Shown here: in pieces, positions 802-63,622 of the stretch | Layout of the letters: every line of letters starts with the position of its first letter | How positions within the stretch are numbered: the stretch's first letter is position 1 | IMG/VR virus record: IMGVR_UViG_3300046517_002304 | Span: 186,001 to 250,000 of that record | Direction: 5' to 3' (one strand) | Length of the DNA: 64,000 nt | Translations under genes and position numbers: made by a program | The notes under the pieces: model-generated | The model's database searches: none | The model's input: only the letters and a program-made list of their open reading frames with translations | What the model was told of the DNA's origin: nothing

Positions 802-1857
802 TTAACTTGTAGCAGCAGTAAATTCCGCAATTTGGGCGGGCTTTTTAAACTGAGATGCTACTGCTCTAAGAACCGTCATCCATTCAGGGCTTCCTTTAGG
901 CAGCGCTCTCCAGTCATCAATCGTCATCATAGTCCCACGGGGGGCCTTTGGATCAATGTATCTTTTTGCTATATGAACAATGTACTTATTAATTATTGCT
1001 TCTTTTGGCGTCATTGTGCCTGGCGCTGGGGGCGGAGCCGGGCCTGTTGGAGTTGCCCCTTTTGCTATTTCATCGTCTATTCTTTGAGCTTCTTGTTCTA
1101 CTATTGCATTATTACCTATATCATAATGATGCGTAAGATGCTGAACAAAGTCTAGGGCGCTTTCTGGTCTGCCTCCCATTGCTCCCATTTCCGCTCTATA
1201 GGTTGCATATAATTTTTTAAGCATGCTTTGCCAAGGAGCGGATTTACGCAAATATAGAGAGATGATAAATATTGACAGCAAATCTCTAATTGCCTTGTCT
1301 TTTGGCTTCCATCTAGCCCTTTTTTCAAATCCATCAATTATGAACTGATGCTCCGCTTTATCCTTGCTTGATGCATGCGGAGTATGGGTCTTAGGCGGTG
1401 TTGGAACTTGACGATGCTGTTCCCAGTTATCATCTAAAGTATTGTTAATAACCTGCGGATCATGAACTCCGGGAGGGAATCGGTATATCTTTGGATTTAA
1501 ATCATGTGCTTGTACATACAATCCAATTAATTCTCTTGGATTAAATTGATGCTGATTTACTTTATTGATACTATTTGTTAAGTCAATTAGGGTTTTATCT
1601 GGAATAATTTGATTTAAAGCCAAGGACTTTACGACATTAGTAAGATTTTTCTTAGCAAATAGGTCGGCTTTGTTCCACTTAACATTATGCTCACTTTGCA
1701 AAAACTTTATAAACTCATCCGCCGCTTTATTAAAATCTGCATCTGTAGGCTTGCCTTGTGTAATTCCCTGCATCATTCCTTGTGCGAATTGATTCACACC
1801 AGATAAGAATCCAGCTTCATCGTACTGATTGCTCCACTCTTTAAACCTTAATGCCAT
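802..1857 (-). CDS. Hypothetical protein with FKEW N-terminal motif; candidate virion internal protein
   Basis: ORF of about 350 aa. Likely start MALRFKEW at 1857, 5 nt after TAAATA. Contains Pro-rich linkers. Confidence 0.6.
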   Translation of the reverse strand: MALRFKEWSNQYDEAGFLSGVNQFAQGMMQGITQGKPTDADFNKAADEFIKFLQSEHNVKWNKADLFAKKNLTNVVKSLALNQIIPDKTLIDLTNSINKVNQHQFNPRELIGLYVQAHDLNPKIYRFPPGVHDPQVINNTLDDNWEQHRQVPTPPKTHTPHASSKDKAEHQFIIDGFEKRARWKPKDKAIRDLLSIFIISLYLRKSAPWQSMLKKLYATYRAEMGAMGGRPESALDFVQHLTHHYDIGNNAIVEQEAQRIDDEIAKGATPTGPAPPPAPGTMTPKEAIINKYIVHIAKRYIDPKAPRGTMMTIDDWRALPKGSPEWMTVLRAVASQFKKPAQIAEFTAATS

Positions 1858-1893
1858 AAACATATTTAGAGTTTGGCACGATATTATTAGTAT

Positions 1894-2280
1894 ATGGAAA
1901 GAAAAGAATTAGTCATTAGTCATCATATGTTTTTGACGCAAAAACAAAGGTATAGCTTATCCGAAGATGACACCACCCTTGAAGTTAGCGGAAGTAGTCT
2001 GGGCGTATGGAAAAAGGGCACTAAAACAAATGAGCCAGCAGAGGCGGTAGAGTGTAAGTATAAAATAACAAACAACATTTCTAGGCCCATTTTACAAGTT
2101 GACGGCGAAAATTATAAAATTGCATTGCCTGATTATGAGTCTAGGGCAGGATTACTCAATCCAAAAGACGGAGGGTTTAAAGGATTTCAATTTGCTTATA
2201 AAGAAGTGAATGAAAACTACGATTCTACTCATTATATCATAATTAATGACTATGATGAAATGATTGCGTCAAAAATCTAG
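1894..2280 (+). CDS. Hypothetical protein
   Basis: 128-aa ORF filling the space between neighbours; no motif recognised. Confidence 0.6.
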   Translation: MERKELVISHHMFLTQKQRYSLSEDDTTLEVSGSSLGVWKKGTKTNEPAEAVECKYKITNNISRPILQVDGENYKIALPDYESRAGLLNPKDGGFKGFQFAYKEVNENYDSTHYIIINDYDEMIASKI

Positions 2281-2316
2281 ATATATCTGATGCTTTAACA
2301 AGGAGTCAGAATATCA

Positions 2317-2754
2317 ATGTCAGTATCATTTAGCAATAATCAGGCAACATTAATCGTTGGGTCGCCTAATGCTCCATCAGTACAGGCCGCAGGCCGTTTA
2401 ACTGCAAAAACTAGCTCACAAGCATCCGTAGCAACATATACCGTTGGGTCGGCGGATGGATCTTTTGAAGTATCTGCAAACGTTTTGGTGACGGCATCAA
2501 GTAGCCATGCCTTTACCATTACCTGCGCATATACTGATGAAGGAAGCACTTCTAGAACGCTAACCATGTGCTTTACATTGGTGGCTGGCGGAACTTTGGT
2601 TACGTCTGTCGCAAACGCAAACGGAACAGTTCCATATATGGGAATTACTCAGCATATCAGATGCAAGGCTGCAACAGCCATTACTATAGCTACTACTGGC
2701 ACCTTTGGCAGCGTAACGTACAACGTAGAAGGTGTAATTAAGCAAACGGCCTGA
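2317..2754 (+). CDS. Thr/Ala/Ser-rich beta-strand protein, possible virion accessory protein
   Basis: 145 aa; AAGGAG Shine-Dalgarno upstream; composition typical of decoration or fibre proteins. Confidence 0.5.
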   Translation: MSVSFSNNQATLIVGSPNAPSVQAAGRLTAKTSSQASVATYTVGSADGSFEVSANVLVTASSSHAFTITCAYTDEGSTSRTLTMCFTLVAGGTLVTSVANANGTVPYMGITQHIRCKAATAITIATTGTFGSVTYNVEGVIKQTA

Positions 2755-2825
2755 AATTAACGGCTATAAAAATTATCCTGTATTAAATTCCATAAATAAA
2801 TAAGACCCTTATTTTAGGCAATTAC

Positions 2826-3731: not shown

Positions 3732-4477
3732 AGAACATTTAAGGGTGAGTTCTGGAAGTAAGAACATAAACTTTTATACTCGCACAATCCGCAATGATCC
3801 CCAACTGTTCCTACAACTGTATCTGGATTGGACTCCATAACTTCGTTGTAAACCTTAAGCAGTTTCTTGGGCACATTCTCTAGTGTTTGTTTACTAAACT
3901 TAGCAGAAATAAGGCTTCCACCTTGCAGATAATAAAGTCCTGCTTTAATCTTACTTGGATCTACATTATACATCTCTGAAACCACCCATGTATAACACAT
4001 TAGTTGTAGGTCATTTACCACCGTCTGCATAGTTTTGCGAAACTTGCCTTCTTTGGTGGTTTTAAAATCTAAAATCCAGTATTCGTCATTTCTCTTAATA
4101 ATCATATCCATAAAGCCGACAACAAATTTATTGTGCGGGGCGTCTAAGTCCTTTTTAAATGGCACTTCAATCTCAGCATCTGTACCTATCTTTTTTGACA
4201 GCACCATGAATTGCTTTAAGTCCTTTGGCAATTGTTGGGCATAATGATACGGCAGTGGATTCTCGGTAGTCATTACTTCTTTTGAAATATCATTAATATT
4301 CATCATACCTTTATGCTTGGTATAAAGTTCAATGACCTTATGAACTATTTTTCCATATCTAAACCAGATTTGTTCGGGAATTGGGCTAGGTGTCTTGAGG
4401 TGATATTTTAACTTGTATTTGTATTTACATTGTTCAATAGTCCCAACTCTGCTGACGCTGATATGTTCTATATTCAT
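3728..4477 (-). CDS. PD-(D/E)XK nuclease, RecB/AddB/Cas4-like, with 4-Cys Fe-S staple
   Basis: Motifs EIEVPF, GFMDMII and ILDFKTT, plus QLMCY. One N-terminal Cys (IEQCKY) and C-terminal HCGLCEYKSLC. Confidence 0.85.
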   Translation of the reverse strand: MNIEHISVSRVGTIEQCKYKYKLKYHLKTPSPIPEQIWFRYGKIVHKVIELYTKHKGMMNINDISKEVMTTENPLPYHYAQQLPKDLKQFMVLSKKIGTDAEIEVPFKKDLDAPHNKFVVGFMDMIIKRNDEYWILDFKTTKEGKFRKTMQTVVNDLQLMCYTWVVSEMYNVDPSKIKAGLYYLQGGSLISAKFSKQTLENVPKKLLKVYNEVMESNPDTVVGTVGDHCGLCEYKSLCSYFQNSPLNVL

Positions 4478-4573
4478 ATTGATTTATCGGTTAATAAGAA
4501 AAAATAATTTAAGCCTCAATAGAAATTAGCATTTATACGATAAATTATCATCTGGACCTATTATTGGTGAAGC

Positions 4574-27084: not shown

Positions 27085-27090
27085 TTAGTT

Positions 27091-36149: not shown

Positions 36150-36412
36150 GAACATGCGTAGCACTATTCGTCTTTATTTTGATTTCATCATTCTGTCTTG
36201 CCACCTTATGTTTGTGCGTAAGTTGGCACAGGCATGAAAAACCGAAATACATTGACAGCATCATGATTTCAAGATGCTCAGAATACAACTCCAAGCGGAC
36301 AGAATGGGAAAAACTACACTGGAATAAATTTGTTGCGCATATTCGGAGAGATGAGCCATCGCTTTGGGAGCAATACGGCGATCAGCTTAACCGTGGCGTG
36401 TCGGCCAACTAG
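36113..36412 (+). CDS. Small membrane-anchored hypothetical protein
   Basis: N-terminal hydrophobic helix. Start uncertain (ATG near 36146). Confidence 0.5.
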   Translation: MQRALVAWSIIMRTCVALFVFILISSFCLATLCLCVSWHRHEKPKYIDSIMISRCSEYNSKRTEWEKLHWNKFVAHIRRDEPSLWEQYGDQLNRGVSAN

Positions 36413-36692
36413 GGAACTTGCTGTTTCCAGCATTTGGCTGAGTTAGACCTATAACCGTTTTTTGATTTGCTAGATCTGCCGCAAGTCGCTTAACGGTTGT
36501 TTGGTTTGTCATGTTTACTGGAGGACGCTTATTTTTTACGGTTGATATCGCTCCGCTTCCTGTTCCAATATTTGACTTTTGAATAATATCAGAGCCATAA
36601 CCTAACCTTTTAAGTTCTTCGTCATCAAGAACATTTTCAGGGTCTAATCCATACGGATAGTTCTCGTTTAACCATTCTATAAAAGTGATCAA
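36387..36692 (-). CDS. Hypothetical protein with N-terminal FIEWLNE motif
   Basis: MITFIEWLNE; TTG start overlaps the upstream TGA. Confidence 0.55.
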   Translation of the reverse strand: MITFIEWLNENYPYGLDPENVLDDEELKRLGYGSDIIQKSNIGTGSGAISTVKNKRPPVNMTNQTTVKRLAADLANQKTVIGLTQPNAGNSKFPSWPTRHG

Positions 36693-37222
36693 ATGCCGCT
36701 CCCATCTCCTGGTTGAACGGCGCGGCCCTGTCGCACCATATTCCTCATGCCTTGTAAAGCGGCATTATAATCAGGCTGTTGGCCTGGTTGGGTAGCATTT
36801 GCCTTATAGGTTTGTCCATTAAAACTTAATTGTTTACCGTTGCCTGCTTGTAATGCTCGGCCTACGTTGGTGAGGAAGTTTTGAACCTTTGGATCGGTTA
36901 GACCAACCTTTTTTAAATCTCCTTGTAAATCAGTGATTTTTCTAGTTGTCTGCATCACTTGATTGCGTTGTTGGCCTTGTTGAAAATTATTGGATACATT
37001 TTGACCGAAAGACTGTATGCCAGATTTAACCGCTTGTCCTACGGCGTTAACTCCATTGCCGATTGCTTGGCCGATGCCGCCAAGCAACTCGTTATAAATT
37101 TGCTCTTCTGATAATGCATTTTTTCTAGCCAGATACATGGCTACTTCATAAAATTCGTCAAACGATAGCCCAGAGATATCTTCTATATTTTTTTGGATTA
37201 GAAACTCTTTGAATAATTGCAT
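36689..37222 (-). CDS. Gln/Gly-rich hypothetical protein with FKEFL motif
   Basis: MQLFKEFLIQKNIE; TACATA-N4-ATG upstream. Confidence 0.6.
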   Translation of the reverse strand: MQLFKEFLIQKNIEDISGLSFDEFYEVAMYLARKNALSEEQIYNELLGGIGQAIGNGVNAVGQAVKSGIQSFGQNVSNNFQQGQQRNQVMQTTRKITDLQGDLKKVGLTDPKVQNFLTNVGRALQAGNGKQLSFNGQTYKANATQPGQQPDYNAALQGMRNMVRQGRAVQPGDGSGI

Positions 37223-38416: not shown

Positions 38417-39710
38417 GATGATGTGGCTAGAAGAAGAAGGACTGGACGCTAATCCCGGCCAACCCGCTCAAAATATGCAACAACAGCCCGTCCCAACAAT
38501 GCCTAATGCACAACAGGCGTCTATGTCTGATCCTAATCAGCAAAAAATTCCTCAGGCTAATCCTGGTGATCAAAAATCTATGAGCGATAATGATAAGGCT
38601 CCAGATCAAGGTCAGTTAGATCCTAATTCTCCTGATATGCCAGAAGAAAATGACGAAGTTGAATTTAATAGCTGGAAAAATGAATACTTTAAGTTAGCCG
38701 TTCAGGGCGATACTGATAAAATGCTTGATTCTATTGATACTATCAGAAATCATGACCTAAAAGCATCGCAAACTAAGTTCGTAGAAGATAATTTTCAAAT
38801 ACTGCTTTTGAGACAGGACGCTAACTTTGACAAGGTTTCTAAAAGTATAAGAAGGTCTATTAAGACTGACGTTGATAAAGACCATCCTGGCGTATCAATG
38901 ATGCAGATTATATCACAAGAACTAGACCCTAATCCAGTATTAAGCGAAATATTAGTTAAGCTATTCGGATTCCATGGATTAAAAGGTGAGCTACATCGTA
39001 AGTTTCTTGCTGCATTAACCGGATCTGTTCAAGTAGGTGGTGGCGCAAGCAAAGAAGATATAGTTTTTAACGATAAAGATTTCTCAATCAATATCTCCAC
39101 TAGAATGGCCAGTGATTTTGGCGAAATTAATTTAGGTAAGTGGTCGTTACAAGATGACGATACGCATAAGTTCCTTGCCGAACCAGAGGTCGCACGATTA
39201 CAAGAAGGTAGCCCCGAAGAGCGCAAAGCACTGATTCATCGTGTTGTTATGTCAAGTATCGCAGAGAAGTTTAAGAAACGCGCCTTTTTAATACATGTAG
39301 TGTCTGAAACTGGAAATGTTTATAGTATTGGATGGGACTTAGGCGATAGTTTACAGAGCGCATATAAAGAAGGAAAACTTATAGTTAAGAGCGATGATTC
39401 TGATGACGCAGATGTTTCCATTAACGAAGCCGGTGAATTAGTTCCTCTTAAGAATTTAGGCATTTACGCTAAAATGCCAGACAGCGAAATAGGCGATAAT
39501 GGAGAAACAGAAGAAAAAACGGTTCCGTTTATTGAAAATAGAAGCGGCACACTTTACTTTGTCGCTGATATGGACACCATGAATTCTATGGGCGGAAATT
39601 TAGCTGGCATGTCTTTCCAAAACAAGCCATATACAGGTAGTCCAGTAGAGTTTAAAAATTTAACCAGATGCATTCCGTCAATGACTGAATTGCTATTAAG
39701 GAGATGCTAA
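38397..39710 (+). CDS. Hypothetical protein with Q/P/D-rich N-terminus
   Basis: 437-aa ORF; no family recognised. Confidence 0.6.
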   Translation: MSTKINKMMWLEEEGLDANPGQPAQNMQQQPVPTMPNAQQASMSDPNQQKIPQANPGDQKSMSDNDKAPDQGQLDPNSPDMPEENDEVEFNSWKNEYFKLAVQGDTDKMLDSIDTIRNHDLKASQTKFVEDNFQILLLRQDANFDKVSKSIRRSIKTDVDKDHPGVSMMQIISQELDPNPVLSEILVKLFGFHGLKGELHRKFLAALTGSVQVGGGASKEDIVFNDKDFSINISTRMASDFGEINLGKWSLQDDDTHKFLAEPEVARLQEGSPEERKALIHRVVMSSIAEKFKKRAFLIHVVSETGNVYSIGWDLGDSLQSAYKEGKLIVKSDDSDDADVSINEAGELVPLKNLGIYAKMPDSEIGDNGETEEKTVPFIENRSGTLYFVADMDTMNSMGGNLAGMSFQNKPYTGSPVEFKNLTRCIPSMTELLLRRC

Positions 39711-40198
39711 TGCAGTATTTTCATAGTTTTGTTGACAGAAAACACAGAAAAGCAATTAAAGAGTTAAAAACCATAGATGAAGTTCTCACTATGGCCGGGT
39801 TCAAGGTCAAGAAGTTTTTTGAAGACAAGTTTGATCCTTATATCTTCGTAGCGTCAAATGCTGATACTCCATTTGGCGGCATTAGAATATACAAGATTGA
39901 AAGCACGATTGCTTATCGCGCCCAAAACGAAGAAAAAACACATCCTTACGGCAAAGCATTTAATATTGACGTTGAAGGAATATTTGAAGACTATCTAGAA
40001 GATGATGAAGAAGGCGATAAAATTGGAGAAATGGTTGCTAAGGCAATAGCAGAAGACGTGCGCTTCTTTTTCAAGAAAAATGCCGAACTATATTCTCCAT
40101 ATGCACAATTTGACAAAGATAAAACGGACAAGCCACAAATTATGACGCCACCAGTTGGTGGAGCAGATAAATTTAGGGCTGACGGCGCTTGGTCGTAA
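39704..40198 (+). CDS. Hypothetical protein
   Basis: 164 aa, coupled to the previous ORF. Confidence 0.6.
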   Translation: MLMQYFHSFVDRKHRKAIKELKTIDEVLTMAGFKVKKFFEDKFDPYIFVASNADTPFGGIRIYKIESTIAYRAQNEEKTHPYGKAFNIDVEGIFEDYLEDDEEGDKIGEMVAKAIAEDVRFFFKKNAELYSPYAQFDKDKTDKPQIMTPPVGGADKFRADGAWS

Positions 40199-44312: not shown

Positions 44313-44441
44313 ATGAAAAAAGATGATCTAATTTGGTACACATTTATGGCCGGAATAGTTTTGTTTATGGCAGCAAGCGTATTTTGCTGTTGGTATTTTG
44401 GCATGCCGGTTAGTGATGACTATCTAATCATTTGCCCTTAA
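44313..44441 (+). CDS. Small single-TM peptide (42 aa, below the track cut-off)
   Basis: MKKDDLIWYTFMAGIVLFMAASVFCCWYFGMPVSDDYLIICP*; AAGGA upstream. Confidence 0.45.
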   Translation: MKKDDLIWYTFMAGIVLFMAASVFCCWYFGMPVSDDYLIICP

Positions 44442-44805
44442 GTTCATGAAATCGGCACGCAACTTCGCCGAACACTTCCATTTTACCCATTAGTTCTTGG
44501 AATTGTTTCTGTGATACTTTTTGTAGCTTGACTTTGGCCTTTAATTTATTGAATTTGCCTTCTAAGAATCCATGAATATCATTTTTTTTAATATGGGAAA
44601 TTGCTTCGTTATACGCGGGCAACTTAGCGAAGAAATGCCAAGCAGTCAACATCGCTAAACCGCCTTTTTCTTTTGACTTGCGAGCTATTTTTTCTGCGCC
44701 TTCTTTGCGATTTTTGCAAAAATCAATAAGAATTTGATTTACGTTTTCTGAATCTTCTGCTTTTTTACTTTCGCATAGATTATATTCTTCGTATCGTATT
44801 AGCAT
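44428..44805 (-). CDS. Hypothetical protein
   Basis: 125 aa; TAAATA 6 nt upstream (44812-44817); N-terminus MLIRYEEYNLCE. Confidence 0.6.
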   Translation of the reverse strand: MLIRYEEYNLCESKKAEDSENVNQILIDFCKNRKEGAEKIARKSKEKGGLAMLTAWHFFAKLPAYNEAISHIKKNDIHGFLEGKFNKLKAKVKLQKVSQKQFQELMGKMEVFGEVACRFHELKGK

Positions 44806-44854: not shown

Positions 44855-45202
44855 ATGCTACAAATCACTGATGTCGCTGCGCAAGAGATTAAGAGCGTTA
44901 TGAAGCAAAACAATGTGCCTGATAACACTTACTTAAAGCCCTTTATCCAAAGTCAAAGCTGTTCTGGAACTAGCTTTGGACTTGGCTTTGTGGATACGGT
45001 GGATGCCGACGATATTACGCTAGAAGTTCAAGGCATTAAAGTTTTAATTAATGAAGCAGAGGAGCCACTCCTTAAGTCAACAACTATTGATTACAACATT
45101 GAGAAGAAGGGGTTTGTTTTCAAGAACCCGCTTCAAACCATAAACAATAGTAGTGCTGGTGGATGCGGTAGTTGCTCAACAGGTGGCTGCGGAAGCCATT
45201 AG
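44855..45202 (+). CDS. HesB/IscA family A-type Fe-S carrier
   Basis: MLQITDVAA, CSG.SFGLGF, L..TTIDY, GFVFKNP and Cys-rich C-terminus. Confidence 0.85.
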   Translation: MLQITDVAAQEIKSVMKQNNVPDNTYLKPFIQSQSCSGTSFGLGFVDTVDADDITLEVQGIKVLINEAEEPLLKSTTIDYNIEKKGFVFKNPLQTINNSSAGGCGSCSTGGCGSH

Positions 45203-46017
45203 AATATAAAGTTCATAAGTCCAGTCATCTTGACTTCGCTGGCAGAATCCGTAATGCTAATATAGCCGTTGGCGAACTTTATTTTCATATTTGCGCTTGA
45301 GCCATAGTCTTTATCGGCGTTGTTGCCTTTACTCGGATAAAGCCGCAGCGATTCAGCCTCTGCATCATATTGTCGTTTAATTAAATCGGAGTAAGAGATA
45401 AGACCCGCATCTTTCGTTTTAGTTTTTTCATTTTTATAAAGATGGTATGCCGACACTTTGGCCTCGTTTCTTAGCTCATCTTGCGAAGCATGAATAAATA
45501 CATTATAAAATACGTTAAAGAATATCGGACCTCCTGATACACCAAGTATAGAACTAATTACAGCATGAGGATGCATACTGGCATTGTTGCTTGATAGATA
45601 TACATCTAGTTTTGCCGCGTCAAATCCAGTAGCTTTTTGAAAAGTCCATGAACGTTTTAGTATATCGGATACCTTTTGCTTCATTTCGTTAAATTTAGGT
45701 GTGTTAAATTCTAAAAACCATATAAAATCTAAATCGGCATCTTTGCTATCTGGCCTGACGCTGTAATACGTCTTATCTGCTTTATAGCCCTGTTCTTTAT
45801 TGAACAGGAAATCTTTAATTATACTAAGAACAGCTTTGCTATCTGCGTCTTTTCTTTTGGCCCACGTAAGCACTTTTTTTCTAAAACTAGGCCAGTCATC
45901 ATCGCCGCCCCCGCCCCCACCGCCGTCATAATCATTGTTGTCAGTGTTGTTTATATTTCCTATATCAGAGCCTTTAATAGTGGCGACTGCTTCTAAAAAC
46001 TGCTTAAAGGACTTCAT
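45199..46017 (-). CDS. Hypothetical protein with FKQFLE N-terminal motif
   Basis: Start MKSFKQFLE at 46017, TAATG-coupled to the upstream gene; Gly7/Asp linker. Confidence 0.65.
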   Translation of the reverse strand: MKSFKQFLEAVATIKGSDIGNINNTDNNDYDGGGGGGGDDDWPSFRKKVLTWAKRKDADSKAVLSIIKDFLFNKEQGYKADKTYYSVRPDSKDADLDFIWFLEFNTPKFNEMKQKVSDILKRSWTFQKATGFDAAKLDVYLSSNNASMHPHAVISSILGVSGGPIFFNVFYNVFIHASQDELRNEAKVSAYHLYKNEKTKTKDAGLISYSDLIKRQYDAEAESLRLYPSKGNNADKDYGSSANMKIKFANGYISITDSASEVKMTGLMNFIF

Positions 46018-46550: not shown

Positions 46551-46554
46551 GATA

Positions 46555-46560: not shown

Positions 46561-46561
46561 G

Positions 46562-46589: not shown

Positions 46590-46608
46590 GCACGGTTGGA
46601 GAAAAATC

Positions 46609-48483: not shown

Positions 48484-49404
48484 TTGATGGCAAAAAATCT
48501 CAAACGATGTTTGTTTTTCATAATTCTATTTGCCATACTCTTCTCATCGCTCCCGCAAGACAAATATAAAAACGGTGCCGTTGTCTTAATAGGCGGCGGA
48601 TATTGTGCAGAGGGCATTGAGTGGCTGTTAAATAAGGCCGAAAGTAGAGAGATGCTCGTGCTATCGTCAGATGACGTATGGATGAGCTGGCTATACAGAC
48701 TTCAGGCCAATACTAAGATAGACTTCTTAATAATACCATCTAGGGATGCCGCTAACTCAGATCAAGTAATTGATAAAATCTATAGAGCTAAATCCATTCT
48801 GATATCCGGAGGCTATCAGAACGATTACATTAAGTTATGGAAAGGAACCAAGCTTGCGGCAGCAATAAGCAAAATGGCTTATAAAATTCCCGTTGGTGGG
48901 TCAAGTGCCGGACTAGCTATTATGGGTGAATTTTACTATTCAGCAAAAAACAATACGGTGATTAGCGATGAAGCGCTATTCAACCCGTATAATGAGTTTA
49001 TGTCTGATATTGATAATAACTTTCTTAAATTACCATTTATGGAAAATATAATTACTGACTCTCATTACGCAGAAAGAGGGCGACAAGGCAGACACTTGGT
49101 CTTCATGGCGAGAATATTAAATGATAGGCATATAGAAAATATTAAAGGAATCGGAATAGATGAAGACACGGCTTTATGCATTGACTACCGGGGAACCACA
49201 ACCGTTTTAGGGAATGGCAAGTGTTATCTTATAGAAAATCTATCTTTCCCGAAGATATGCATTATAGGACAATGCCTAATCTGGAACAGAGCAGCAAGGG
49301 CGTACATCATTAGTTCTGGCACCGTATTTGATATTAATAAATGGAAATTTGAGAGCAGCGAAGTTTGGAGTGTTGAAGACGGGAAACTAGTCCGCGCTAA
49401 TTAG
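48484..49404 (+). CDS. Cyanophycinase-like S51 serine peptidase with signal peptide
   Basis: VLIGGG, ISGGYQ, GGSSAG (Ser), TDSHY (His) and GIGIDEDTA (Glu); hydrophobic N-terminus. Confidence 0.85.
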   Translation: MMAKNLKRCLFFIILFAILFSSLPQDKYKNGAVVLIGGGYCAEGIEWLLNKAESREMLVLSSDDVWMSWLYRLQANTKIDFLIIPSRDAANSDQVIDKIYRAKSILISGGYQNDYIKLWKGTKLAAAISKMAYKIPVGGSSAGLAIMGEFYYSAKNNTVISDEALFNPYNEFMSDIDNNFLKLPFMENIITDSHYAERGRQGRHLVFMARILNDRHIENIKGIGIDEDTALCIDYRGTTTVLGNGKCYLIENLSFPKICIIGQCLIWNRAARAYIISSGTVFDINKWKFESSEVWSVEDGKLVRAN

Positions 49405-49840
49405 CGTATCTTTTAATTAATGAAATAGAATGATTAATTAAAGCGCTAAGCCCGAAGTGCTTCGGTTGTATTTTCAGAAGCTCATTTAAATCTACCCACT
49501 TAAACTCCTGCGTTTCACAGTTGCTGGTCGGCTGAAATTCTTCGGGTACTAAACCGATGAAATTATGATACTCAAAATCCTTATCTTTAAACACATAAGC
49601 GGGAATTAGGTTTATCATTCCACGATAACCAGTTTCTTCATGAAACTCTCTATTGGCTTCTGCTTTTAGGCTTATCGTATTATCGTCTACCTTACCGCCG
49701 ATAGTTCCATAGGTATTTGGCTCATTCACATGAATAGAGCGCAATGCTATTAGAATTCTCTTCGTAGTAAAAGAAATGGGCAATATCCCAACTCCCTTGC
49801 TTCCCCAATATCGGGATTCTAAATAGTTTTTGAATTTCAT
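49397..49840 (-). CDS. Nudix hydrolase with FKNYLE N-terminal motif
   Basis: GG....REFHEETGY Nudix box. Start MKFKNYLE at 49840 (TAATG-coupled). Confidence 0.85.
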   Translation of the reverse strand: MKFKNYLESRYWGSKGVGILPISFTTKRILIALRSIHVNEPNTYGTIGGKVDDNTISLKAEANREFHEETGYRGMINLIPAYVFKDKDFEYHNFIGLVPEEFQPTSNCETQEFKWVDLNELLKIQPKHFGLSALINHSISLIKRYAN

Positions 49841-50097: not shown

Positions 50098-50982
50098 TTA
50101 GGATACATTAACCGGTTTATTATTGACAACCACTTTAGGCAAGGCGTCTAGTATGGCTTCTATAAGTTTAACCTGCCCATCGTCAACCTTTTCTAGGTAT
50201 ATGAATAAATCTGCTAAGTTTCTAGCATCTGGATGGTATGAGTATCTATTGGCCAGAAGGTGCTGTATGGCTTTTAGCATTTCATCTTCGGAATCGCCCA
50301 GTACATGCTTTGTGAGAGCAAAGTAATCTCTTTTAAATTGGGCTACTCTTACGCCAAATTCATGCGGCATTAAATAATATTTAACAGTATTTTTTTCATC
50401 TCTGTCAAGGTCTGAATTATCAATATCGGCATCAGTAAATTGTCTAATAAGTCGCTCTTTAAAAGTATTTTGGGCAGCGTGCGTTAGCTCGTGTGCCAGT
50501 GCTTCTTCTTCATCTTTTTTAGCAACTACGCAGAAAGGATTGCCGATTGCGTCGTTGGAGCAAAAGGCTACATTGCCCGTTAACTTACCCTTTAGCTCAT
50601 CTGGACTTACGTTTATAACTGGAACGTACTGCATCATTCTAATCTGGTTAAACACCATGCCGCTTTTGGCATCTGCGGGTTTTTGAGCCTTAACTGCATT
50701 GCTTATTGCACTATCAGTTTTATCACCATAAAAACCATGTATTACATCTAGTGGTTTATAAAAAGCAATTTGATCTGGGTTTAAATTATACCCATATGTT
50801 TTTTTAACATATTGAATTAAGTCGGCCTTTCTCTCAACTTCTGTTGCCTTATCAGGATGAATCCGAGATACCTTTGGCATTATACCCATCATGGCTGTGC
50901 CGATTACTAATGGACTTGCTATTTTACGAAGCCTGCTGTTCATAAGACCCTCAGTTTGAATTAGCCATTCTCTAAATCGCAT
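50098..50982 (-). CDS. Zincin-like (HExxH) metallopeptidase-domain protein with FREWL motif
   Basis: ALAHELTHAAQ (50479-50493) and downstream PHEF; N-terminus MRFREWLIQTE. Confidence 0.65.
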   Translation of the reverse strand: MRFREWLIQTEGLMNSRLRKIASPLVIGTAMMGIMPKVSRIHPDKATEVERKADLIQYVKKTYGYNLNPDQIAFYKPLDVIHGFYGDKTDSAISNAVKAQKPADAKSGMVFNQIRMMQYVPVINVSPDELKGKLTGNVAFCSNDAIGNPFCVVAKKDEEEALAHELTHAAQNTFKERLIRQFTDADIDNSDLDRDEKNTVKYYLMPHEFGVRVAQFKRDYFALTKHVLGDSEDEMLKAIQHLLANRYSYHPDARNLADLFIYLEKVDDGQVKLIEAILDALPKVVVNNKPVNVS

Positions 50983-50986
50983 GAAT

Positions 50987-50992
50987 TATTTA
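50987..50992 (-). promoter_or_regulatory. Late-promoter-like TAAATA
   Basis: 4 nt before ATG 50982. Confidence 0.6.
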
Positions 50993-58078: not shown

Positions 58079-60193
58079 TTAAACAGTTTGCGAAAGCTGA
58101 TAGGCCGTAAAGTTTTTATTTGCCGTTTTGTCTCTCGGTTCTAAAACAATTTTTGCGTGGATTTTCATCATCGGCTCTTGGAACTCTGGATCTTTTGTCC
58201 TTACCGATGTTTGAATTGCCTTTTTTAGAATTGGCATCATTTCAGATTCAAATTTAGAATTATACTCTACGCTTACATTATTATGTTCGTCCGAATGCAA
58301 TATCACCAATCCCTTTTCATCATATGCAACACCAACAGATATCTCGGATGCGGCGGCATATATGTCTTCGTTATCTGGCTCTGCCTCATATTTCCAACTT
58401 TCTTCTTCTTCCTCTTGTTTTAGTTGCTTAATCTTCCACTCAACATACTCATTATAATACTTTGTTTTTATTAGTTGCTCAAGGTCTTCATTTGAAATAT
58501 CATCTGGTACATCAAGCGATTCATCGCTAGCAAAATCATCCATGTCATATCCAATATCATTCATTACTTCTTCTTTATCTTCTCCGTAAGATTCCGATGG
58601 CTTAGATTCAACGTTTCCCTGAGCTTTCTCCATAGCAGCTTCATATGCGTCATCGTGTACTTCGTCAAAATCAACTATTTCATTTGAGATAAAATCTTCT
58701 TCATCTATGCTGTCGCCTCTGTAGGAAACGTATTTATCTGGTACGTCTTCCCATGTTTTCATGCCATCCTTAAGCACTAGGTATTTCCACGCAAGCTCGC
58801 CTATAATAAACTTATTGTTTTCGGTTTTTTGTCGCGCAGCTTCCTTTCTGTCTTCGTCTGCCTTAGTATGTTGGGCATGGGCATCATCTATATGAGCCAT
58901 TATTCTAGGATCAATCTGGAGATACTTAGAAAGCTCTTTTATGTTTGTTACAGCATGCTTTTCCAGTGGCTCGCCAGGATTCTCTAAATATGAATTTAGT
59001 TCTTGCGTATACTCTTGCTTAAATTTGTTAAATTGTGATGGAATAAGAGACTCTAGGGCGGCAGAGTGTTTAAAAATATTTATTGCATCGTAATAACTCT
59101 GTTCACGTATATTTTCTATAACATCATTTACGTTATCGTCTAAAAATTTGGCTATGTAAAAGATTACAGAGCCTCTATTGGTTTTGTCTGCCGCAGCCTT
59201 GTTCATAATATCATACAGATACTTGTTATCTTTACTAACAGCCCGAATAAAGAAATGTAGTATTTCATCATCGGCATAACTGGCTTTTATAAATTTACTT
59301 ACATCATTTAAAGGCACTCTGGTATTGGCTGGCTTAATGTCTAGAGCAGGATGCTTTCTCCCTCCAGAAACCGTTGTGCCGACACCATTGATTCTATGCA
59401 TTACCATTTCGTGTGCATTAGGATATCCTTTTAACATTGTATCTGCTAAAAACTTTAAGTAAGCTACATTATTGTTATATTCATTTTGCCATTTGTCTTT
59501 CGCCTCATGACCAGTTTTGCTATGGACGGTTTCTATAGTACGTCCACTCATCCTATCTCTAATTTCATAAAACTCCATTAAATCATTATCGATCAACGGT
59601 TTAGCAGCCTGCTTCATCATGTCAAGAACGCCATCAATAGCATGTTGCGGGTGTTCGTTTCTAAAAAAGTAAGACCAAGAACCAGATGCTTTTGATACAG
59701 AAATGCCAGTAGTGATTTTTTGTGCATTGGATGCGCCAGCCTTAATGTCTGGGACTGCCGAAACTTTATGCTGAGTGTCCTGCGCATTCTTAAACTTATT
59801 TAATAAATCCTGTTTTTCAGGTTCAAACTCATCGCTTTTAATGTTCTTAACAATATTAGACCAGTCTGATTCGCCTTCTTTATATGGAACCGGCTTACCG
59901 GCCTTAGATTGTAATAACGGCGCTAAAGTTTTGATAAAGCTAATGTCTACGCCTTTTCCTGCCTCAATAGGATTAGTTTTGGTAATGCCAACGTGTGTCG
60001 GCCTCTGACTTATAGAAACATATCCTACTCTTCTTGCTTGATACGGTGCAATAAAATAAGTAGACCATTCGGTATCCGTCTGATAGTTGAACTCTTTAAT
60101 GAAATGTGGCTCAACGACATGAAGAGTGGATTCGCCTATCCCATCTTGGATGACGATGCTTTCTGATAACAGGAGCCACTCTTTGAAATTCAT
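58079..60193 (-). CDS. Large hypothetical protein with FKEWL N-terminal motif and acidic C-terminal third
   Basis: 704 aa; MNFKEWLLLSE; TAAATA-N4-ATG. Confidence 0.65.
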   Translation of the reverse strand: MNFKEWLLLSESIVIQDGIGESTLHVVEPHFIKEFNYQTDTEWSTYFIAPYQARRVGYVSISQRPTHVGITKTNPIEAGKGVDISFIKTLAPLLQSKAGKPVPYKEGESDWSNIVKNIKSDEFEPEKQDLLNKFKNAQDTQHKVSAVPDIKAGASNAQKITTGISVSKASGSWSYFFRNEHPQHAIDGVLDMMKQAAKPLIDNDLMEFYEIRDRMSGRTIETVHSKTGHEAKDKWQNEYNNNVAYLKFLADTMLKGYPNAHEMVMHRINGVGTTVSGGRKHPALDIKPANTRVPLNDVSKFIKASYADDEILHFFIRAVSKDNKYLYDIMNKAAADKTNRGSVIFYIAKFLDDNVNDVIENIREQSYYDAINIFKHSAALESLIPSQFNKFKQEYTQELNSYLENPGEPLEKHAVTNIKELSKYLQIDPRIMAHIDDAHAQHTKADEDRKEAARQKTENNKFIIGELAWKYLVLKDGMKTWEDVPDKYVSYRGDSIDEEDFISNEIVDFDEVHDDAYEAAMEKAQGNVESKPSESYGEDKEEVMNDIGYDMDDFASDESLDVPDDISNEDLEQLIKTKYYNEYVEWKIKQLKQEEEEESWKYEAEPDNEDIYAAASEISVGVAYDEKGLVILHSDEHNNVSVEYNSKFESEMMPILKKAIQTSVRTKDPEFQEPMMKIHAKIVLEPRDKTANKNFTAYQLSQTV

Positions 60194-60197
60194 ACCT

Positions 60198-60203
60198 TAT
60201 TTA
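60198..60203 (-). promoter_or_regulatory. Late-promoter-like TAAATA
   Basis: 4 nt before ATG 60193. Confidence 0.6.
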
Positions 60204-60231
60204 CTTTGGAAGACAATCTTTCTACAACTGA

Positions 60232-60239
60232 TATAAATA
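60232..60239 (+). promoter_or_regulatory. T4-type late promoter TATAAATA
   Basis: Exact consensus, 4 nt before ATG 60244. Confidence 0.75.
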
Positions 60240-60243
60240 CTAT

Positions 60244-61593
60244 ATGAACTTCAAGGTGTGGCTAGAAGCAATACTAGACCCAAATGTAAAATACTTAGGT
60301 AAATACCCTAACGATTACGGCGATAAAAAGCCACGCCTTGGTAGGGGAGCTTATCTTAAACTAGATACTAATGGTCGCGTCACATCCTTAACCCAAGACG
60401 ATTGGGAACGGGGCACTCCATATATACAAATACAGCCGAATCACTCAATATCTTTGCACAAGATAAGCCCTCAATCGCCTGATTTTGCTAAAATTATAAA
60501 AGCATTAAAGCCAAAGTTCCATGATATAGGAAATTGGCAAGTTGAGTATTTCTTTATGGCAAGCCATTTAGTAACCGGTAATGAAAAATATTATCGTACA
60601 GTAGATTACTGGCTTAAACATACTGTTAATATTAACGATACCTTGCCCGAATTCTTTTATCACGGAACATCCACCAATCAGTGGTATGAAGGCATTAAGA
60701 AAAATGGCTTACTACCAAGAAATATTACCGGATCTGCCGGAGGGTATGGTTCACAAAACGCAAGTTCTTTAAGCAAAAAAGGTATAGTTTATCTTTCTAC
60801 TCATCCCGACGCGGCCACAAGAACCGCAGCAGAACAGGCGGCAAACAAACATGGTGGAGTGCCGCTGATACTGAAAATCAATAGTTCTGGGATATTCAAG
60901 GATAAATTAGTACCAGATGAAGATTCAAGGCAACCAAATGCCCAAAAGTCAATCGTTAAAATGTCAACTGTAGGATATGAAGGGCGAGTACCTCCATCGG
61001 CCATAGAGCCATTTTTACTTGGTAATGAATATGAAAAAAATAGTCGGCTTTATACTAAATGGGAAAAATTTAAAGACGTTCCAGTTGCCGAACATCCATT
61101 AACCGCACGTTTAAAATCTGGAATGACGCCATACAGCAATGATCCAGAATACTATATTTTGAGGGATGCGGGAATTATTAAAAGAGAAAAAACAAGAAAC
61201 CCTACTAGTGGCTGGCCATCTGAAAACGACGTTCAAACTAGAGAAGTAAGCGACGAAGAGTTACGCAAATTACTTAAAAATGGTGGGTGGGCAAACACTG
61301 CTAGGGCGATTAGTACTGATTTAAACAATGGCTATCAAGGATGCATATACAGCTTAAAAGACATCACCCTGCCGCCTAACATGTCGCCAGAATCGGAAAG
61401 TATAATTAAGATGCTAACTGACAGTAGGCTATGCGGCACTGATACTCGGGGCGAAAAGAGGTATATCTATTTAAACAACTACGATTCAATGGATAGGGTA
61501 ATTGCCTTAGCTAAACTTCTACATGCTAAAAAGATGGACATGGACGATCTATGCCGAGAAATAAAAACTATTACGGCGTTGCCATTAGACTGA
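60244..61593 (+). CDS. ADP-ribosyltransferase/Tpt1-fold domain protein with FKVWLE motif
   Basis: FYHGTS..IKKNGLLP..VYLST..A..A..LILKI..VPPSAI. Confidence 0.7.
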   Translation: MNFKVWLEAILDPNVKYLGKYPNDYGDKKPRLGRGAYLKLDTNGRVTSLTQDDWERGTPYIQIQPNHSISLHKISPQSPDFAKIIKALKPKFHDIGNWQVEYFFMASHLVTGNEKYYRTVDYWLKHTVNINDTLPEFFYHGTSTNQWYEGIKKNGLLPRNITGSAGGYGSQNASSLSKKGIVYLSTHPDAATRTAAEQAANKHGGVPLILKINSSGIFKDKLVPDEDSRQPNAQKSIVKMSTVGYEGRVPPSAIEPFLLGNEYEKNSRLYTKWEKFKDVPVAEHPLTARLKSGMTPYSNDPEYYILRDAGIIKREKTRNPTSGWPSENDVQTREVSDEELRKLLKNGGWANTARAISTDLNNGYQGCIYSLKDITLPPNMSPESESIIKMLTDSRLCGTDTRGEKRYIYLNNYDSMDRVIALAKLLHAKKMDMDDLCREIKTITALPLD

Positions 61594-62115
61594 CATTAAG
61601 TGAGTTCTTTGAATCTGCTTGCCTACCCCGCCTGGCGGAGGTAATGGCGAAGGTGGATTCCTATCATCATCGCCGCCATTATCGTTATCATGGCCATTAT
61701 AAAAGCCATAAATAGCATTCTCAATAAAATGCACAACTTGCGCCGGCGATTTCAATGGAGTTTGAGGATGTAAATTGTCTGCTATGGAATGAGATAAATT
61801 ATCTCTCTGCATTCTTAGATTTACGAAAAACTTAAGGAACTTATTACCAGTAGCGTGGTCATATTGTAAATTATCCACATCATCGCCAGCGGCCTTATCA
61901 ACCACAACATCTACAGTGGCAAGAAATACGTCATTCTTATGAATACCTCTTCCAGTAAAAGATAGGCGATTATGAAAGCTATATTTTGGATCAAAGTTTA
62001 CTTCTTTCCAATCCATAGTCCAATTACCGGCTATATGTTTGGAAAAAGCTTGCTTAAAATCATTGGCTAAATTAGATAATGATTGGCTATGCTCAACAAA
62101 TAGTTTAAACTTCAT
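61585..62115 (-). CDS. Hypothetical protein with FKLFVE motif
   Basis: MKFKLFVE; TAAATA-N4-ATG; D/G/P-rich tail. Confidence 0.6.
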   Translation of the reverse strand: MKFKLFVEHSQSLSNLANDFKQAFSKHIAGNWTMDWKEVNFDPKYSFHNRLSFTGRGIHKNDVFLATVDVVVDKAAGDDVDNLQYDHATGNKFLKFFVNLRMQRDNLSHSIADNLHPQTPLKSPAQVVHFIENAIYGFYNGHDNDNGGDDDRNPPSPLPPPGGVGKQIQRTHLMSV

Positions 62116-62119
62116 ATAC

Positions 62120-62125
62120 TATTTA
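62120..62125 (-). promoter_or_regulatory. Late-promoter-like TAAATA
   Basis: 4 nt before ATG 62115. Confidence 0.6.
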
Positions 62126-62129
62126 GAAG

Positions 62130-62381
62130 TTAATATCCGTAATCTTCGGAATAATCGCCGTCCATAGGATCAATTATAACGTCAGCATCATAGGCCCACT
62201 TAGATAATAGCCTAGATACTTCTTCATAATTCCAGAAGCAGCTTACCATAATTGGACTTTCTTCCCCACAGCTCGGGCCAAATGATCTAATAATGCTTAT
62301 AATTTCACTATCCCATTCACCGGAGGTCCATCTAATATGATAATCGTAAAGTCCAACTCCGCTGAAGTCAAATAGTTTCAT
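62130..62381 (-). CDS. Small acidic hypothetical protein
   Basis: 83-aa ORF. Confidence 0.5.
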   Translation of the reverse strand: MKLFDFSGVGLYDYHIRWTSGEWDSEIISIIRSFGPSCGEESPIMVSCFWNYEEVSRLLSKWAYDADVIIDPMDGDYSEDYGY

Positions 62382-62422
62382 CTGGTAAATCTCTTATTAA
62401 AAATCCACTAATATATATTAGT

Positions 62423-63622
62423 ATGCGATTTTCTCAATTCTTGACAGAAATTAGGACTCCTCCACATATGCCTCTGAAGTATTTCAGAGATAAGCTGGCC
62501 AGCATTTCTGCTATAGAGCAAAATCTGAGTGAATTTGTTTTAAACTATGAAAAATTTCAAGATATTTTATATGATTTCAATGGTACTTCCAACTATTACA
62601 GAATCCGCTTACCATGGGAAATTGGAGAAAAATTAGGCAAAAATACATCATATAAAGATTCATTTTCAGAGCCGATAAGAAGACTATTTCAATATTTAGA
62701 GTTTGATAATCCTCACGGTTGGGAAAAATTTCTGCCAAACATTCTTCCGTTCGGAGAAGAAGGATATCAAGCTTTTATTACAAAGCATCAAAAGACATTG
62801 AGGAAAATGACTCAATTTATAAAAGCTGCGCCTGATTTAGTTAATGAAATAAAAAGTGTTGCTGAATATTTGCAGGGTGGAAATCAAGCCGAGCCAGGAG
62901 CGCCGACTTTAGCAGAGGCAGTAGGGTACGTGAATTACATTGCCAATGGATATCAAAATATAATGAAGTTGCTAAAAGAAGTTTTTGATCTTGAACATAA
63001 ATTAAAAGCGTATATGGAAAGAATACAACTTAATAAAGAGAGACAGTGGAACAGCACCGGAGAAGATATCAAGCCGAAACACGAAGGCACAGAAACATTA
63101 TATCATGCTACAATTGCCGCAGATGCTATTATAAACGGCGGATTTAAAACAAGAGCAGAATTAGGCCATAACGGAGCCTTAGGTGGTGGGCCGAGTGATG
63201 TAGTAAGTTTTACCGCCGACCTAAGAATAGCTAAAGAAATAAGCAAGAACCTAAGAATTGTAGTCAGAATAGCCAAAGGATTAATTAAACCAGAAGAAAT
63301 ACTAAAAATGGCCGCAGACGATAATGTTGACATTAGTAGATTTGACGCTCCCCGTAGTTATGCTCGCCATAAGACAGATGATCCAAAGATGACCTATGAG
63401 TTATTCAGAAGCTTTTTAGCACAGGCACATTTTGATAACAAGCATTATGACCCGTTATTCTTCGACGTATCTTTAGATGATTTGAAAAATGTAGATGAAC
63501 GACAAATTGGCGTACTAGCTTGTAAGGTTGATATGAGCCAAGTGAAAGATTATCTCACATCTATGGAAGAGTATAGAGCGCCGCCTAGTGCAGTTTTAGG
63601 TGTTAGAAAGGCTATAGGATAA
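62423..63622 (+). CDS. Protein with C-terminal ADP-ribosyltransferase-fold domain and FSQFLTE motif
   Basis: TLYHAT..IINGGFK..VVSFTADLRIAK..MEEYRAPPSAV; TATATA 5 nt upstream. Confidence 0.6.
   Translation: MRFSQFLTEIRTPPHMPLKYFRDKLASISAIEQNLSEFVLNYEKFQDILYDFNGTSNYYRIRLPWEIGEKLGKNTSYKDSFSEPIRRLFQYLEFDNPHGWEKFLPNILPFGEEGYQAFITKHQKTLRKMTQFIKAAPDLVNEIKSVAEYLQGGNQAEPGAPTLAEAVGYVNYIANGYQNIMKLLKEVFDLEHKLKAYMERIQLNKERQWNSTGEDIKPKHEGTETLYHATIAADAIINGGFKTRAELGHNGALGGGPSDVVSFTADLRIAKEISKNLRIVVRIAKGLIKPEEILKMAADDNVDISRFDAPRSYARHKTDDPKMTYELFRSFLAQAHFDNKHYDPLFFDVSLDDLKNVDERQIGVLACKVDMSQVKDYLTSMEEYRAPPSAVLGVRKAIG

What the first reader, a model, noticed from the sequence alone, without database searches (positions are those of the whole stretch)
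802..63622. A shared capsid-targeting-like N-terminal tag on at least ten unrelated proteins: a candidate head-packaged cargo system
Seen: the N-termini are MALRFKEW (1857-), MITFIEWLNE (36692-), MQLFKEFLIQKNIE (37222-), MKSFKQFLE (46017-), MKFKNYLE (49840-), MRFREWLIQTE (50982-), MNFKEWLLLSE (60193-), MNFKVWLE (60244+), MKFKLFVE (62115-) and MRFSQFLTE (62423+), with a looser MLIRYEEY (44805-). The bodies are otherwise dissimilar, and none of the recognisable metabolic or baseplate genes carries the tag. Known: T4 internal proteins use a short N-terminal capsid-targeting sequence (IPIII MKTYQEFIAE) that the gp21 prohead protease removes after Glu. Inference: this phage tags a diverse set of proteins, including ART-fold, zincin and Nudix enzymes, for packaging and injection. 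Most also have late-type promoters, as virion cargo should.
Basis: partly seen in the sequence, partly recalled or inferred. Interest (0 to 1): 0.85.

Follow-up and report, generated by a model that had tools for sequence, protein, structure and literature searches.

The report
Capsid-targeting tags in a huge phage
About a dozen unrelated proteins of this 511-kb phage start with the same short address label that phage T4 uses to load proteins into its head for injection, and the phage also encodes the T4-type protease that removes that label, so the label marks a large predicted set of injected proteins.

Summary
Ten N-termini sit where stated, and three more candidates exist (39710+, 750-, and 64726- just outside the window). 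The core F-x-x-[WFY]-[LIVM] within four residues of the start Met occurs in 9 of 76 genes, against 0.37% of internal positions.

The window comes from a 511,233-bp uncultivated phage contig. About 21 kb left of the window, the same contig encodes a T4 gp21-family prohead protease (Peptidase_S77, 6.9e-25), a coiled-coil scaffold-like protein, a Gp23 capsid protein with an N-terminal propeptide, and a T4-type portal and terminase.

The tag matches the T4 capsid-targeting sequence (CTS): T4 IPI is MKTFKEF and IPII/III are MKTYQEFIAE. A weight matrix built only from environmental tags ranks IPI, IPII and IPIII in the top four of 271 T4 ORFs.

In two cargo families every full-length homologue but one keeps the tag, which ends in E followed by A, S, G or N. 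AlphaFold models show it as a detached, low-confidence helix.

The bodies are unrelated: one Nudix enzyme, one ART fold, one weak zincin.

This is a T4-type CTS cargo system, greatly expanded: 53 of 999 genes in a related 595-kb genome against 4 of 271 in T4. Packaging and cleavage remain untested.

The parts
802..1857 (-). Tagged gene, 351 aa, unknown fold. Tag MALRFKEWSNQYDE (nt 1857-1816), predicted cut after E14 (DE|A).
   Evidence: TAAATA lies 5 nt before this ATG. No Pfam or PHROG hit.
36387..36692 (-). Tagged gene, 101 aa, TTG start. Tag (M)ITFIEWLNE (nt 36692-36663), predicted cut L-N-E|N.
   Evidence: GGGAG upstream; overlaps the stop of 37222-. Lies just upstream of the tail module.
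36689..37222 (-). Tagged gene, 177 aa. Tag MQLFKEFLIQKNIE (nt 37222-37181).
   Evidence: TACATA box 4 nt before the ATG.
39704..40198 (+). Additional candidate, 164 aa. MLMQYFHSFVD, with the tag counted from Met3 at 39710.
   Evidence: The LR756511 homologue starts MLEFKEFIDKKE.
44428..44805 (-). Doubtful member, 125 aa, MLIRYEEY.
   Evidence: Homologues start MRTFNEHV or are untagged. The second aromatic and the aliphatic position are not kept.
45199..46017 (-). Tagged gene, 272 aa. Tag MKSFKQFLE (nt 46017-45991), predicted cut F-L-E|A.
   Evidence: Shine-Dalgarno-like GGAAGGA upstream; internal to an operon.
49397..49840 (-). Tagged Nudix hydrolase, 147 aa. Tag MKFKNYLE (nt 49840-49817).
   Evidence: Pfam NUDIX 9.1e-12. 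Orthologues in LR756511 and L121 lack the tag.
50098..50982 (-). Tagged gene, 294 aa, HELTH motif at residue 164 (possible zincin). Tag MRFREWLIQTE (nt 50982-50950).
   Evidence: Weak eCIS_core hit, E = 0.023. Weak metallopeptidase leads by structure.
58079..60193 (-). Tagged gene, 704 aa, no known fold. Tag MNFKEWLLLSE (nt 60193-60161), predicted cut L-S-E|S.
   Evidence: 14 homologues: 13 are tagged and one starts exactly at the junction. In the model, residues 1-11 have pLDDT <50 and the body starts at residue 13. No fold match.
60194..60243 (.). 50-bp divergent intergenic region with two TAAATA boxes, each 4 nt before an ATG.
60244..61593 (+). Tagged ADP-ribosyltransferase-fold protein, 449 aa. 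Tag MNFKVWLE (nt 60244-60267), predicted cut W-L-E|A.
   Evidence: All 14 homologues with an N-terminus are tagged and end in E-A. H140, Y183 and E226 are invariant. Model pLDDT 80.9. The top 20 PDB fold matches are all ART subunits.
61585..62115 (-). Tagged gene, 176 aa. Tag MKFKLFVE (nt 62115-62092).
   Evidence: TAAATA box 4 nt before the ATG.
62423..63622 (+). Tagged gene, 399 aa, weak ART-like leads. Tag MRFSQFLTE (nt 62423-62449), predicted cut L-T-E|I.
   Evidence: Another gene call starts at Met16 and drops the tag.
1..750 (-). N-terminal part of a 481-aa protein with a tag-like start MQFFKFLGN. Weak member.
   Evidence: Weak Peptidase_M4 hit (0.0018). The LR756511 orthologue lacks the first 25 residues.

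Best explanation
The tag is the capsid-targeting sequence (CTS) of the T4 superfamily, kept in a deep-branching 511-kb relative. The proposed mechanism is inferred by homology with T4.

1. The first 8-14 residues form a short amphipathic helix with two aromatic residues three apart, then an aliphatic residue: M-x(1-3)-F-K-E-W-L.
2. This helix docks the protein onto the scaffolding core while the prohead assembles.
3. The gp21-type prohead protease then cuts after the first Glu that follows (…[L/I]-x-E | A/S/G/N). This releases the mature protein inside the head.
4. The protein is delivered to the host with the DNA.

The label is modular. It sits on unrelated bodies (Nudix, ART fold, possible zincin, unknown folds), and orthologous bodies occur with and without it.

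Most tagged genes also carry a TAnATA box 3-6 nt before the ATG. This resembles the T4 late promoter, placed so that the mRNA would have almost no leader.

Shown here: the tag, its enrichment, its match to the T4 CTS, its conservation within cargo families, and the T4-type head genes in the same genome. Inferred: binding to the core, cleavage, packaging, injection and late timing.
For: 1. Enrichment.
2. The same contig encodes the T4-type head genes:
   - Peptidase_S77, 6.9e-25;
   - an adjacent 303-aa coiled-coil protein;
   - Gp23, 2.8e-86, with the domain starting at residue 64, which leaves a propeptide containing L-N-E|S;
   - Portal_T4 and the terminase.
   His85 and Ser140 of T4 gp21 are invariant in the protease alignment.
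3. T4 N-termini read from AF158101: IPI MKTFKEFTS, IPII/III MKTYQEFIAEA. In T4, CTS residues 4 and 7 do the targeting, residues 8 and 10 the processing, and gp21 cuts after L/I-x-E (PMC9026906). The tag has aromatics at the same spacing, then L/I, then E.
4. A weight matrix built from 209 environmental tags ranks T4 gp61.1, IPI, IPII and IPIII first to fourth of 271 T4 ORFs.
5. Logo of 309 tags: E at +5 or +8 from the first aromatic. L/I at P3 in 44% against 15% background. N, S, A and G are enriched at P1'.
6. In two cargo families every homologue with an N-terminus keeps the tag while the spacer length varies, except one that starts at the junction.
7. AlphaFold: the tag is a low-confidence helix and the body starts right after the predicted cut.
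8. The related complete genome LR756511.1 is syntenic with the window. It has gp17, gp20, gp21 and gp23 homologues, a small region-2-only sigma factor, and 47-53 tagged genes.
9. The exact pattern M[NK]FKEW[LF] heads ORFs in more than 100 viral contigs. 12 of those 120 short loci also carry T4 hallmark genes.
10. ART and Nudix proteins are independently argued to be head-packaged in myoviruses (PMC9503650).
Against: - There is no virion proteome, no cleavage data and no transcript data. No RNA run was listed.
- Where E follows L directly (W-L-E), P3 is aromatic rather than the L/I that T4 prefers.
- 50982- has a hydrophobic stretch at residues 21-36 after the tag, which is unusual for head cargo.
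- The scaffold-like protein is identified only by position and composition. T4 gp22 does not hit it.
- The Nudix orthologues without a tag show that packaging is not required for that enzyme.
- The regex has about 1% false positives, for example a primase N-terminus in LR756511 and 3-4 T4 ORFs.
Confidence: 0.8

Rival explanations
1. The peptide is a cleavable or recognition label for a fate other than the head. Examples are a pro-peptide that only keeps enzymes inactive until gp21-type cleavage, a degron, or an address for a membrane or another intracellular compartment of a huge phage.
For: - Nothing here shows physical packaging.
- One tagged protein has a hydrophobic segment after the tag.
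- The phage encodes an actin-like protein, so intracellular organisation is possible.
Against: - Near identity to the experimentally defined T4 CTS.
- The T4-type protease, capsid and portal module is in the same genome.
- The tag has no signal-peptide character.
Confidence: 0.1
2. The conserved N-terminus is a by-product of a nucleotide signal around the start codon: a promoter, or a translation-initiation element of leaderless mRNAs.
For: - A TAnATA box lies 3-6 nt before 16% of gene starts, against 0.4% of other ATGs.
- 29 of 47 tagged genes in LR756511 have this box, against 48 of 952 untagged genes.
Against: - Synonymous codons vary freely within the tag: TTT/TTC, AAA/AAG, GAA/GAG and several Leu codons.
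- Tagged genes exist with Shine-Dalgarno starts or translational coupling and no box (46017-, 36692-, 49840-).
- Box-adjacent structural genes have unrelated N-termini.
- T4 IP genes carry the same peptide behind ordinary leaders.
Confidence: 0.04
3. The tagged proteins are diverged paralogues that kept only an ancestral N-terminus.
For: Some neighbouring contigs carry arrays of tagged paralogues.
Against: - The bodies show no similarity to each other and have different folds: Nudix, ART, unknown.
- The Nudix and the 481-aa protein have untagged orthologues.
Confidence: 0.03
4. Chance or compositional bias of AT-rich N-termini.
For: K, N and F codons are common after start codons in AT-rich genomes.
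Against: - Composition-preserving shuffles and the internal-Met control.
- Trp at the second aromatic position.
- ORF-start concordance across the viral contigs.
Confidence: 0.01

Closest known systems
T4 internal proteins IPI, IPII and IPIII and their capsid-targeting sequence, removed by the gp21 prohead protease
   Same: - An N-terminal peptide of about 10 residues with aromatics three apart, then an aliphatic residue, then Glu, often followed by Ala.
- Unrelated bodies behind a shared label.
- The gp21, gp23 and gp20 homologues are in the same genome.
- The sequences are near identical (MKTFKEF).
   Different: - Trp is usual at the second aromatic position.
- The spacer before the Glu varies from 0 to 4 residues.
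- The repertoire is dozens of tagged genes per genome instead of 3-4.
- Cargo ranges up to about 1000 aa.
- A promoter-like box abuts the start codon, rather than lying about 25 nt upstream with a Shine-Dalgarno site.
T4 Alt, a head-packaged ADP-ribosyltransferase
   Same: An ART-fold enzyme with an N-terminal propeptide ending in Glu, predicted to be delivered with the DNA.
   Different: Alt starts MELITELFDE, which is not the aromatic CTS. There is no detectable sequence similarity between Alt and 60244+.
Ejection / inner-body proteins of phiKZ-like giant phages (phiKZ gp175 and SPN3US gp245 proteases)
   Same: Many head-internal proteins are processed after Glu by a diverged gp21 homologue.
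   Different: Those phages use long propeptides and the S/A-x-E motif, with no short shared N-terminal label. Their capsid lineage is different.
MuF- or portal-fused polyvalent effectors of phages (PMC9503650)
   Same: A strategy for loading ART, Nudix and other enzymes into heads.
   Different: Loading there works by fusion to a structural domain, not by a cleavable address peptide. No MuF domain was found here.
Encapsulin cargo-loading peptides
   Same: A short terminal peptide directs diverse enzymes into an HK97-fold shell.
   Different: Encapsulin peptides are usually C-terminal, bind the shell directly, are not cleaved, and are not linked to DNA packaging. The comparison rests on my own knowledge and was not tested here.

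Membership tests
T4-type CTS cargo system | N-terminal peptide of about 10 residues with the targeting residues (T4 positions 4 and 7, aromatic) three apart | tested here: met
   A matrix trained without T4 ranks T4 IPI, IPII and IPIII in the top 4 of 271 ORFs.
T4-type CTS cargo system | Processing site ending in Glu (L/I-x-E) at the end of the peptide | tested here: met
   In the sequence, E lies within +5 to +8 of the first aromatic in 73% of tags. L/I at P3 in 44% against 15% background. The E-A and E-S/G/N junction is conserved in two families. Actual cleavage was not tested.
T4-type CTS cargo system | gp21-family prohead serine protease in the same genome | tested here: met
   L219:3829-4515:-, Peptidase_S77 6.9e-25. 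T4 H85 and S140 are invariant.
T4-type CTS cargo system | T4-type capsid, portal and scaffolding core | tested here: met
   Gp23 2.8e-86 and Portal_T4 4.9e-64. The scaffold is identified only by its position between protease and capsid gene and its coiled-coil composition.
T4-type CTS cargo system | Label is modular: unrelated bodies, and the same body with or without it | tested here: met
T4-type CTS cargo system | Late expression together with head genes | tested here: inconclusive
   A TAnATA box abuts 7-8 of the tagged starts and some structural genes, such as the gp25-like gene. The relative has a small region-2-only sigma factor. No transcript data.
T4-type CTS cargo system | Processed proteins present inside virions and injected | not testable with these tools
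   The phage is uncultivated and no proteome is available.
phiKZ-like inner-body / ejection proteins | S/A-x-E sites in long propeptides and a gp175-type protease | tested here: not met
   The protease here is closer to T4 gp21 (phmmer 3.9e-23 for the relative). The tags are short, and L/I or an aromatic is at P3.
MuF / polyvalent-protein fusion cargo | Fusion to a MuF, portal or other head domain | tested here: not met
   No such Pfam domain in any tagged protein.

The most novel reading that the evidence does not exclude
In this huge-phage lineage the CTS, together with a start-abutting promoter box, acts as a portable cassette. It lets the phage load 50 or more different enzymes (about 5% of its genes) into the head and exchange them quickly. 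If so, a simple N-terminal matrix would read out the injected proteome, and with it many counter-defence candidates, of thousands of uncultivated T4-superfamily phages.
Probability: 0.45. Interest if true: 0.75.

Novelty: new member of a known kind. Interest (0 to 1): 0.6.

Why it matters
Proteins injected with phage DNA act before any phage gene is expressed, so they are prime candidates for counter-defence and host take-over functions. They are normally found only by virion proteomics of cultured phages.

This window suggests that the T4 address label is conserved far outside the T-even phages. The capsid protein here is only about 30% identical to those of cultured T4-like phages. The label has also been applied to dozens of unrelated proteins in genomes above 500 kb.

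That gives a sequence-only way to list candidate injected proteins in uncultivated phages. It also yields testable cargo here: an ART-fold enzyme, a Nudix hydrolase and several proteins of unknown fold.

It flags an annotation problem as well. Gene callers that pick a later Met or an upstream ATG hide the tag.

Tried and rejected
- Megablast of 20 kb of the window against GenBank phages: no match.
- tblastn of the 704-aa protein against the same collection: no match.
- PHROGs: only the Nudix and one family of unknown function hit.
- Literal search for 'FKEWL' in papers: only unrelated insect neuropeptide papers.
- Papers on the capsid targeting sequence: none deals with huge or uncultivated phages.
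- RNA runs to map transcript starts: none was listed.
- T4 gp55 by phmmer in the relative: nothing. A two-sequence profile with the cyanophage gp55 then found a small sigma factor.
- T4 gp22, gp67 and gp68: no hit in the own contig.
- Fold search of the 704-aa protein: no match.
- PDB sequence search of 50982-: nothing.
- Isoelectric point. Tagged proteins are more basic in LR756511 (median 8.3 against 6.5, P = 0.003) but not in the own 96-kb region. I do not use this as evidence.
- A first merge of the fetched loci used an offset wrong by 3 nt. It was corrected: window position = contig position - 186000.
- The whole 511-kb contig could not be fetched. Only contig 160300-256193 was read.
Full report
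**Observation.** The window has about 76 genes.
- All ten main tags are there.
- 36692- uses TTG behind a GGGAG and overlaps the stop of the upstream gene.
- 1857- and 49840- are not the first ATG of their ORFs. They fit a TAAATA-N5-ATG spacing and a TAATG stop-start overlap respectively.
- The core F..[WFY][LIVM] within four residues of the start Met is found in 9 of 76 genes. It occurs at 69 of 18,636 internal positions and after none of 412 internal Met.
- Shuffling residues 2-13 keeps the aromatic content of each N-terminus. It gives 1.3 expected hits against 7 observed.
- The bodies do not resemble each other.
- Synonymous codons vary inside the tag, so selection acts on the peptide.

**Where the window comes from.** The 704-aa tagged protein located the window on IMGVR_UViG_3300046517_002304, a contig of 511,233 bp. 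Window position equals contig position minus 186000.
- There is no close relative among GenBank phages.
- A baseplate protein hits the uncultured 595-kb phage LR756511.1. I fetched that genome whole.
- Window 1.9-40 kb is syntenic with LR756511 542-580 kb.

**The tag elsewhere.**
In 95 of 129 matches the ATG heads an ORF of at least 60 aa. In 86 a stop lies within 15 codons upstream. Chance matches would not behave this way.
- Neighbouring genes in those loci carry variants such as MKFSEWLEMRE, MNFKQWLILSE and MKTFAEYLVEA.
- A logo from 309 non-redundant tags reads M-(K)-[NSTK]-F-K-E-W-L-x-x-x-E. Glu is at +5 (22%) or +8 (34%) from the first aromatic.
- At the first Glu, L/I is at P3 in 44% against 15% background, and N, S, A and G are enriched at P1'.
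- LR756511 has 47 of 999 genes matching the strict regex, against 10.3 +/- 3.1 after shuffling.

**The head module.**
- phmmer with T4 proteins read from AF158101 found gp17, gp20, gp21 (3.9e-23), gp23, gp25 and gp13 homologues in LR756511. They lie just beside the region syntenic with the window.
- I walked left from the window on its own contig. Locus L219 covers contig 160300-182027.
- In L219, Pfam gives the following:
  - Peptidase_S77, 6.9e-25, at 3829-4515 (window -21872 to -21186);
  - Gp23, 2.8e-86, at 1385-2836, with the domain starting at residue 64;
  - Portal_T4, 4.9e-64, interrupted by an intein;
  - the terminase, which carries Terminase_6N and matches T4 gp17 (phmmer 1.1e-36).
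- Between the protease and the capsid gene lies a 303-aa Glu/Lys/Ala-rich coiled-coil protein, where T4 has gp22.
- The protease keeps T4 His85 and Ser140. That these are the catalytic residues is from my own knowledge.
- The capsid protein is 60.7% identical to that of LR756511 and about 30% identical to those of cultured T4-like phages.

**Comparison with the T4 CTS.**
- T4 IPII and IPIII start MKTYQEFIAEA, and IPI starts MKTFKEFTS.
- PMC9026906 reports four things. The first ten residues of IPIII suffice for packaging. Residues 4 and 7 carry the targeting. Residues 8 and 10 carry the processing. gp21 cuts after L/I-x-E.
- The tag here has aromatics at the same spacing, then Leu/Ile, then Glu.
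- As an independent test I built a weight matrix from 209 environmental tags and scored all 271 T4 ORFs. The top four are gp61.1, IPI, IPII and IPIII. The median ORF scores -10.8.
- At the IPII/III score, T4 has 4 hits, the 96 kb read from this contig has 10 of 121, and LR756511 has 53 of 999. The last two counts are partly circular, because those tags helped to train the matrix.
- The T4-like cyanophage S-SSM4 has 2 regex hits among 191 ORFs in the 150 kb read. The label is therefore widespread but normally rare.

**Behaviour within cargo families.**
- Family of 60244+. All 14 homologues that have an N-terminus carry the tag, followed after 0-4 variable residues by E-A. Two fragments lack the region.
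- Family of 60193-. 13 of 14 homologues carry it, ending [L/I/F]-x-E and then S, G or N. One homologue starts MEN exactly at that junction.
- AlphaFold models (pLDDT 80.9 and 82.3) show the tag as a short, low-confidence helix. In the 704-aa protein, residues 1-11 are below pLDDT 50 and the first strand of the body begins at residue 13.
- The Nudix protein and the 481-aa protein have orthologues without the tag.

**What the cargo is.**
- 49840- is a Nudix hydrolase.
- 60244+ has invariant H140-G-T, Y183 and E226. The twenty best PDB fold matches of its model are all ADP-ribosyltransferase subunits, with probability 0.35-1.0 (0.77 or higher for the first 19) and E about 1e-3 at best. Atlas leads agree.
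- 62423+ has only weak ART-like leads.
- 50982- has HELTH and weak metallopeptidase leads.
- The 704-aa protein has no fold match.
- Iyer et al. (PMC9503650) argue on other grounds that ART and Nudix proteins are often head-packaged in myoviruses.

**Promoter-like box.**
- TAnATA lies 3-6 nt before 19 of 121 gene starts in the 96 kb read from this contig, and before 15 of 3784 other ATGs.
- Seven of ten regex-tagged genes have it, against 12 of 111 others. In LR756511 the figures are 29 of 47 against 48 of 952.
- Some structural genes, such as the gp25-like gene, have the box but carry unrelated N-termini. The box therefore does not dictate the peptide.
- T4 late promoters (TATAAATA) lie about 25 nt upstream of the ATG.
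- LR756511 encodes a 186-aa sigma factor with region 2 only, found with a gp55 profile.
- Timing, and whether the transcripts are leaderless, remain inference. No RNA run was listed.

**Verdict.** This is a T4-type CTS cargo system in a huge, deep-branching T4-superfamily phage, with a much larger and more varied repertoire than T4. The kind of system is known. Its extent, its cargo and the start-abutting box are new as far as the searched literature shows. Packaging, cleavage and injection still need experiment.

Noticed in passing
window-wide, e.g. 60194-60243, 50983-50995, 27085-27100: A TAnATA box sits 3-6 nt before 16% of gene starts but before only 0.4% of other ATGs. This suggests transcripts with almost no leader, or an unusual initiation signal. 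Tagged genes often stand back to back around such boxes.
   Followed up: partly
L219:12636-15131 (contig 172935-175430, left of the window): The T4-type portal gene is interrupted by an intein (Intein_splicing 2.3e-11).
   Followed up: no
window 7283-8293 (-): Actin-like protein matching Pfam Volactin (2.9e-57). It is conserved in LR756511 at 49% identity.
   Followed up: no
L001, window coordinates about 64992-69895 (outside the window): Tandem array of about 15 small paralogous genes of 80-106 aa, most starting MKAEVKITVG.
   Followed up: no
T4 AF158101 18966-19130 and 73952-74410: T4 gp61.1 (54 aa, MKTFKEFIKEDMV) scores higher than the known internal proteins with the tag matrix. gp57B (MMEFKDFS), next to ipI, ranks fifth. 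These are possible unrecognised CTS proteins of T4.
   Followed up: partly
window 62423-62470; proteins P0005, P0012: Other gene calls start 62423+ at Met16. Some homologues of 60244+ are called from upstream ATGs. Such calls hide the tag in public protein sets.
   Followed up: partly
L219:15512-15952 and L215:4626-5087 (left of the window): Ferritin-like and MscL-like genes lie among the head genes.
   Followed up: no
window 46549-47985 (+): RtcB RNA ligase (2e-76), untagged, next to tagged genes.
   Followed up: no
L131:14260-14820 (LR756511 464260-464820): 186-aa sigma factor with region 2 only, found with a T4/cyanophage gp55 profile. It is a candidate late sigma of this phage group.
   Followed up: partly
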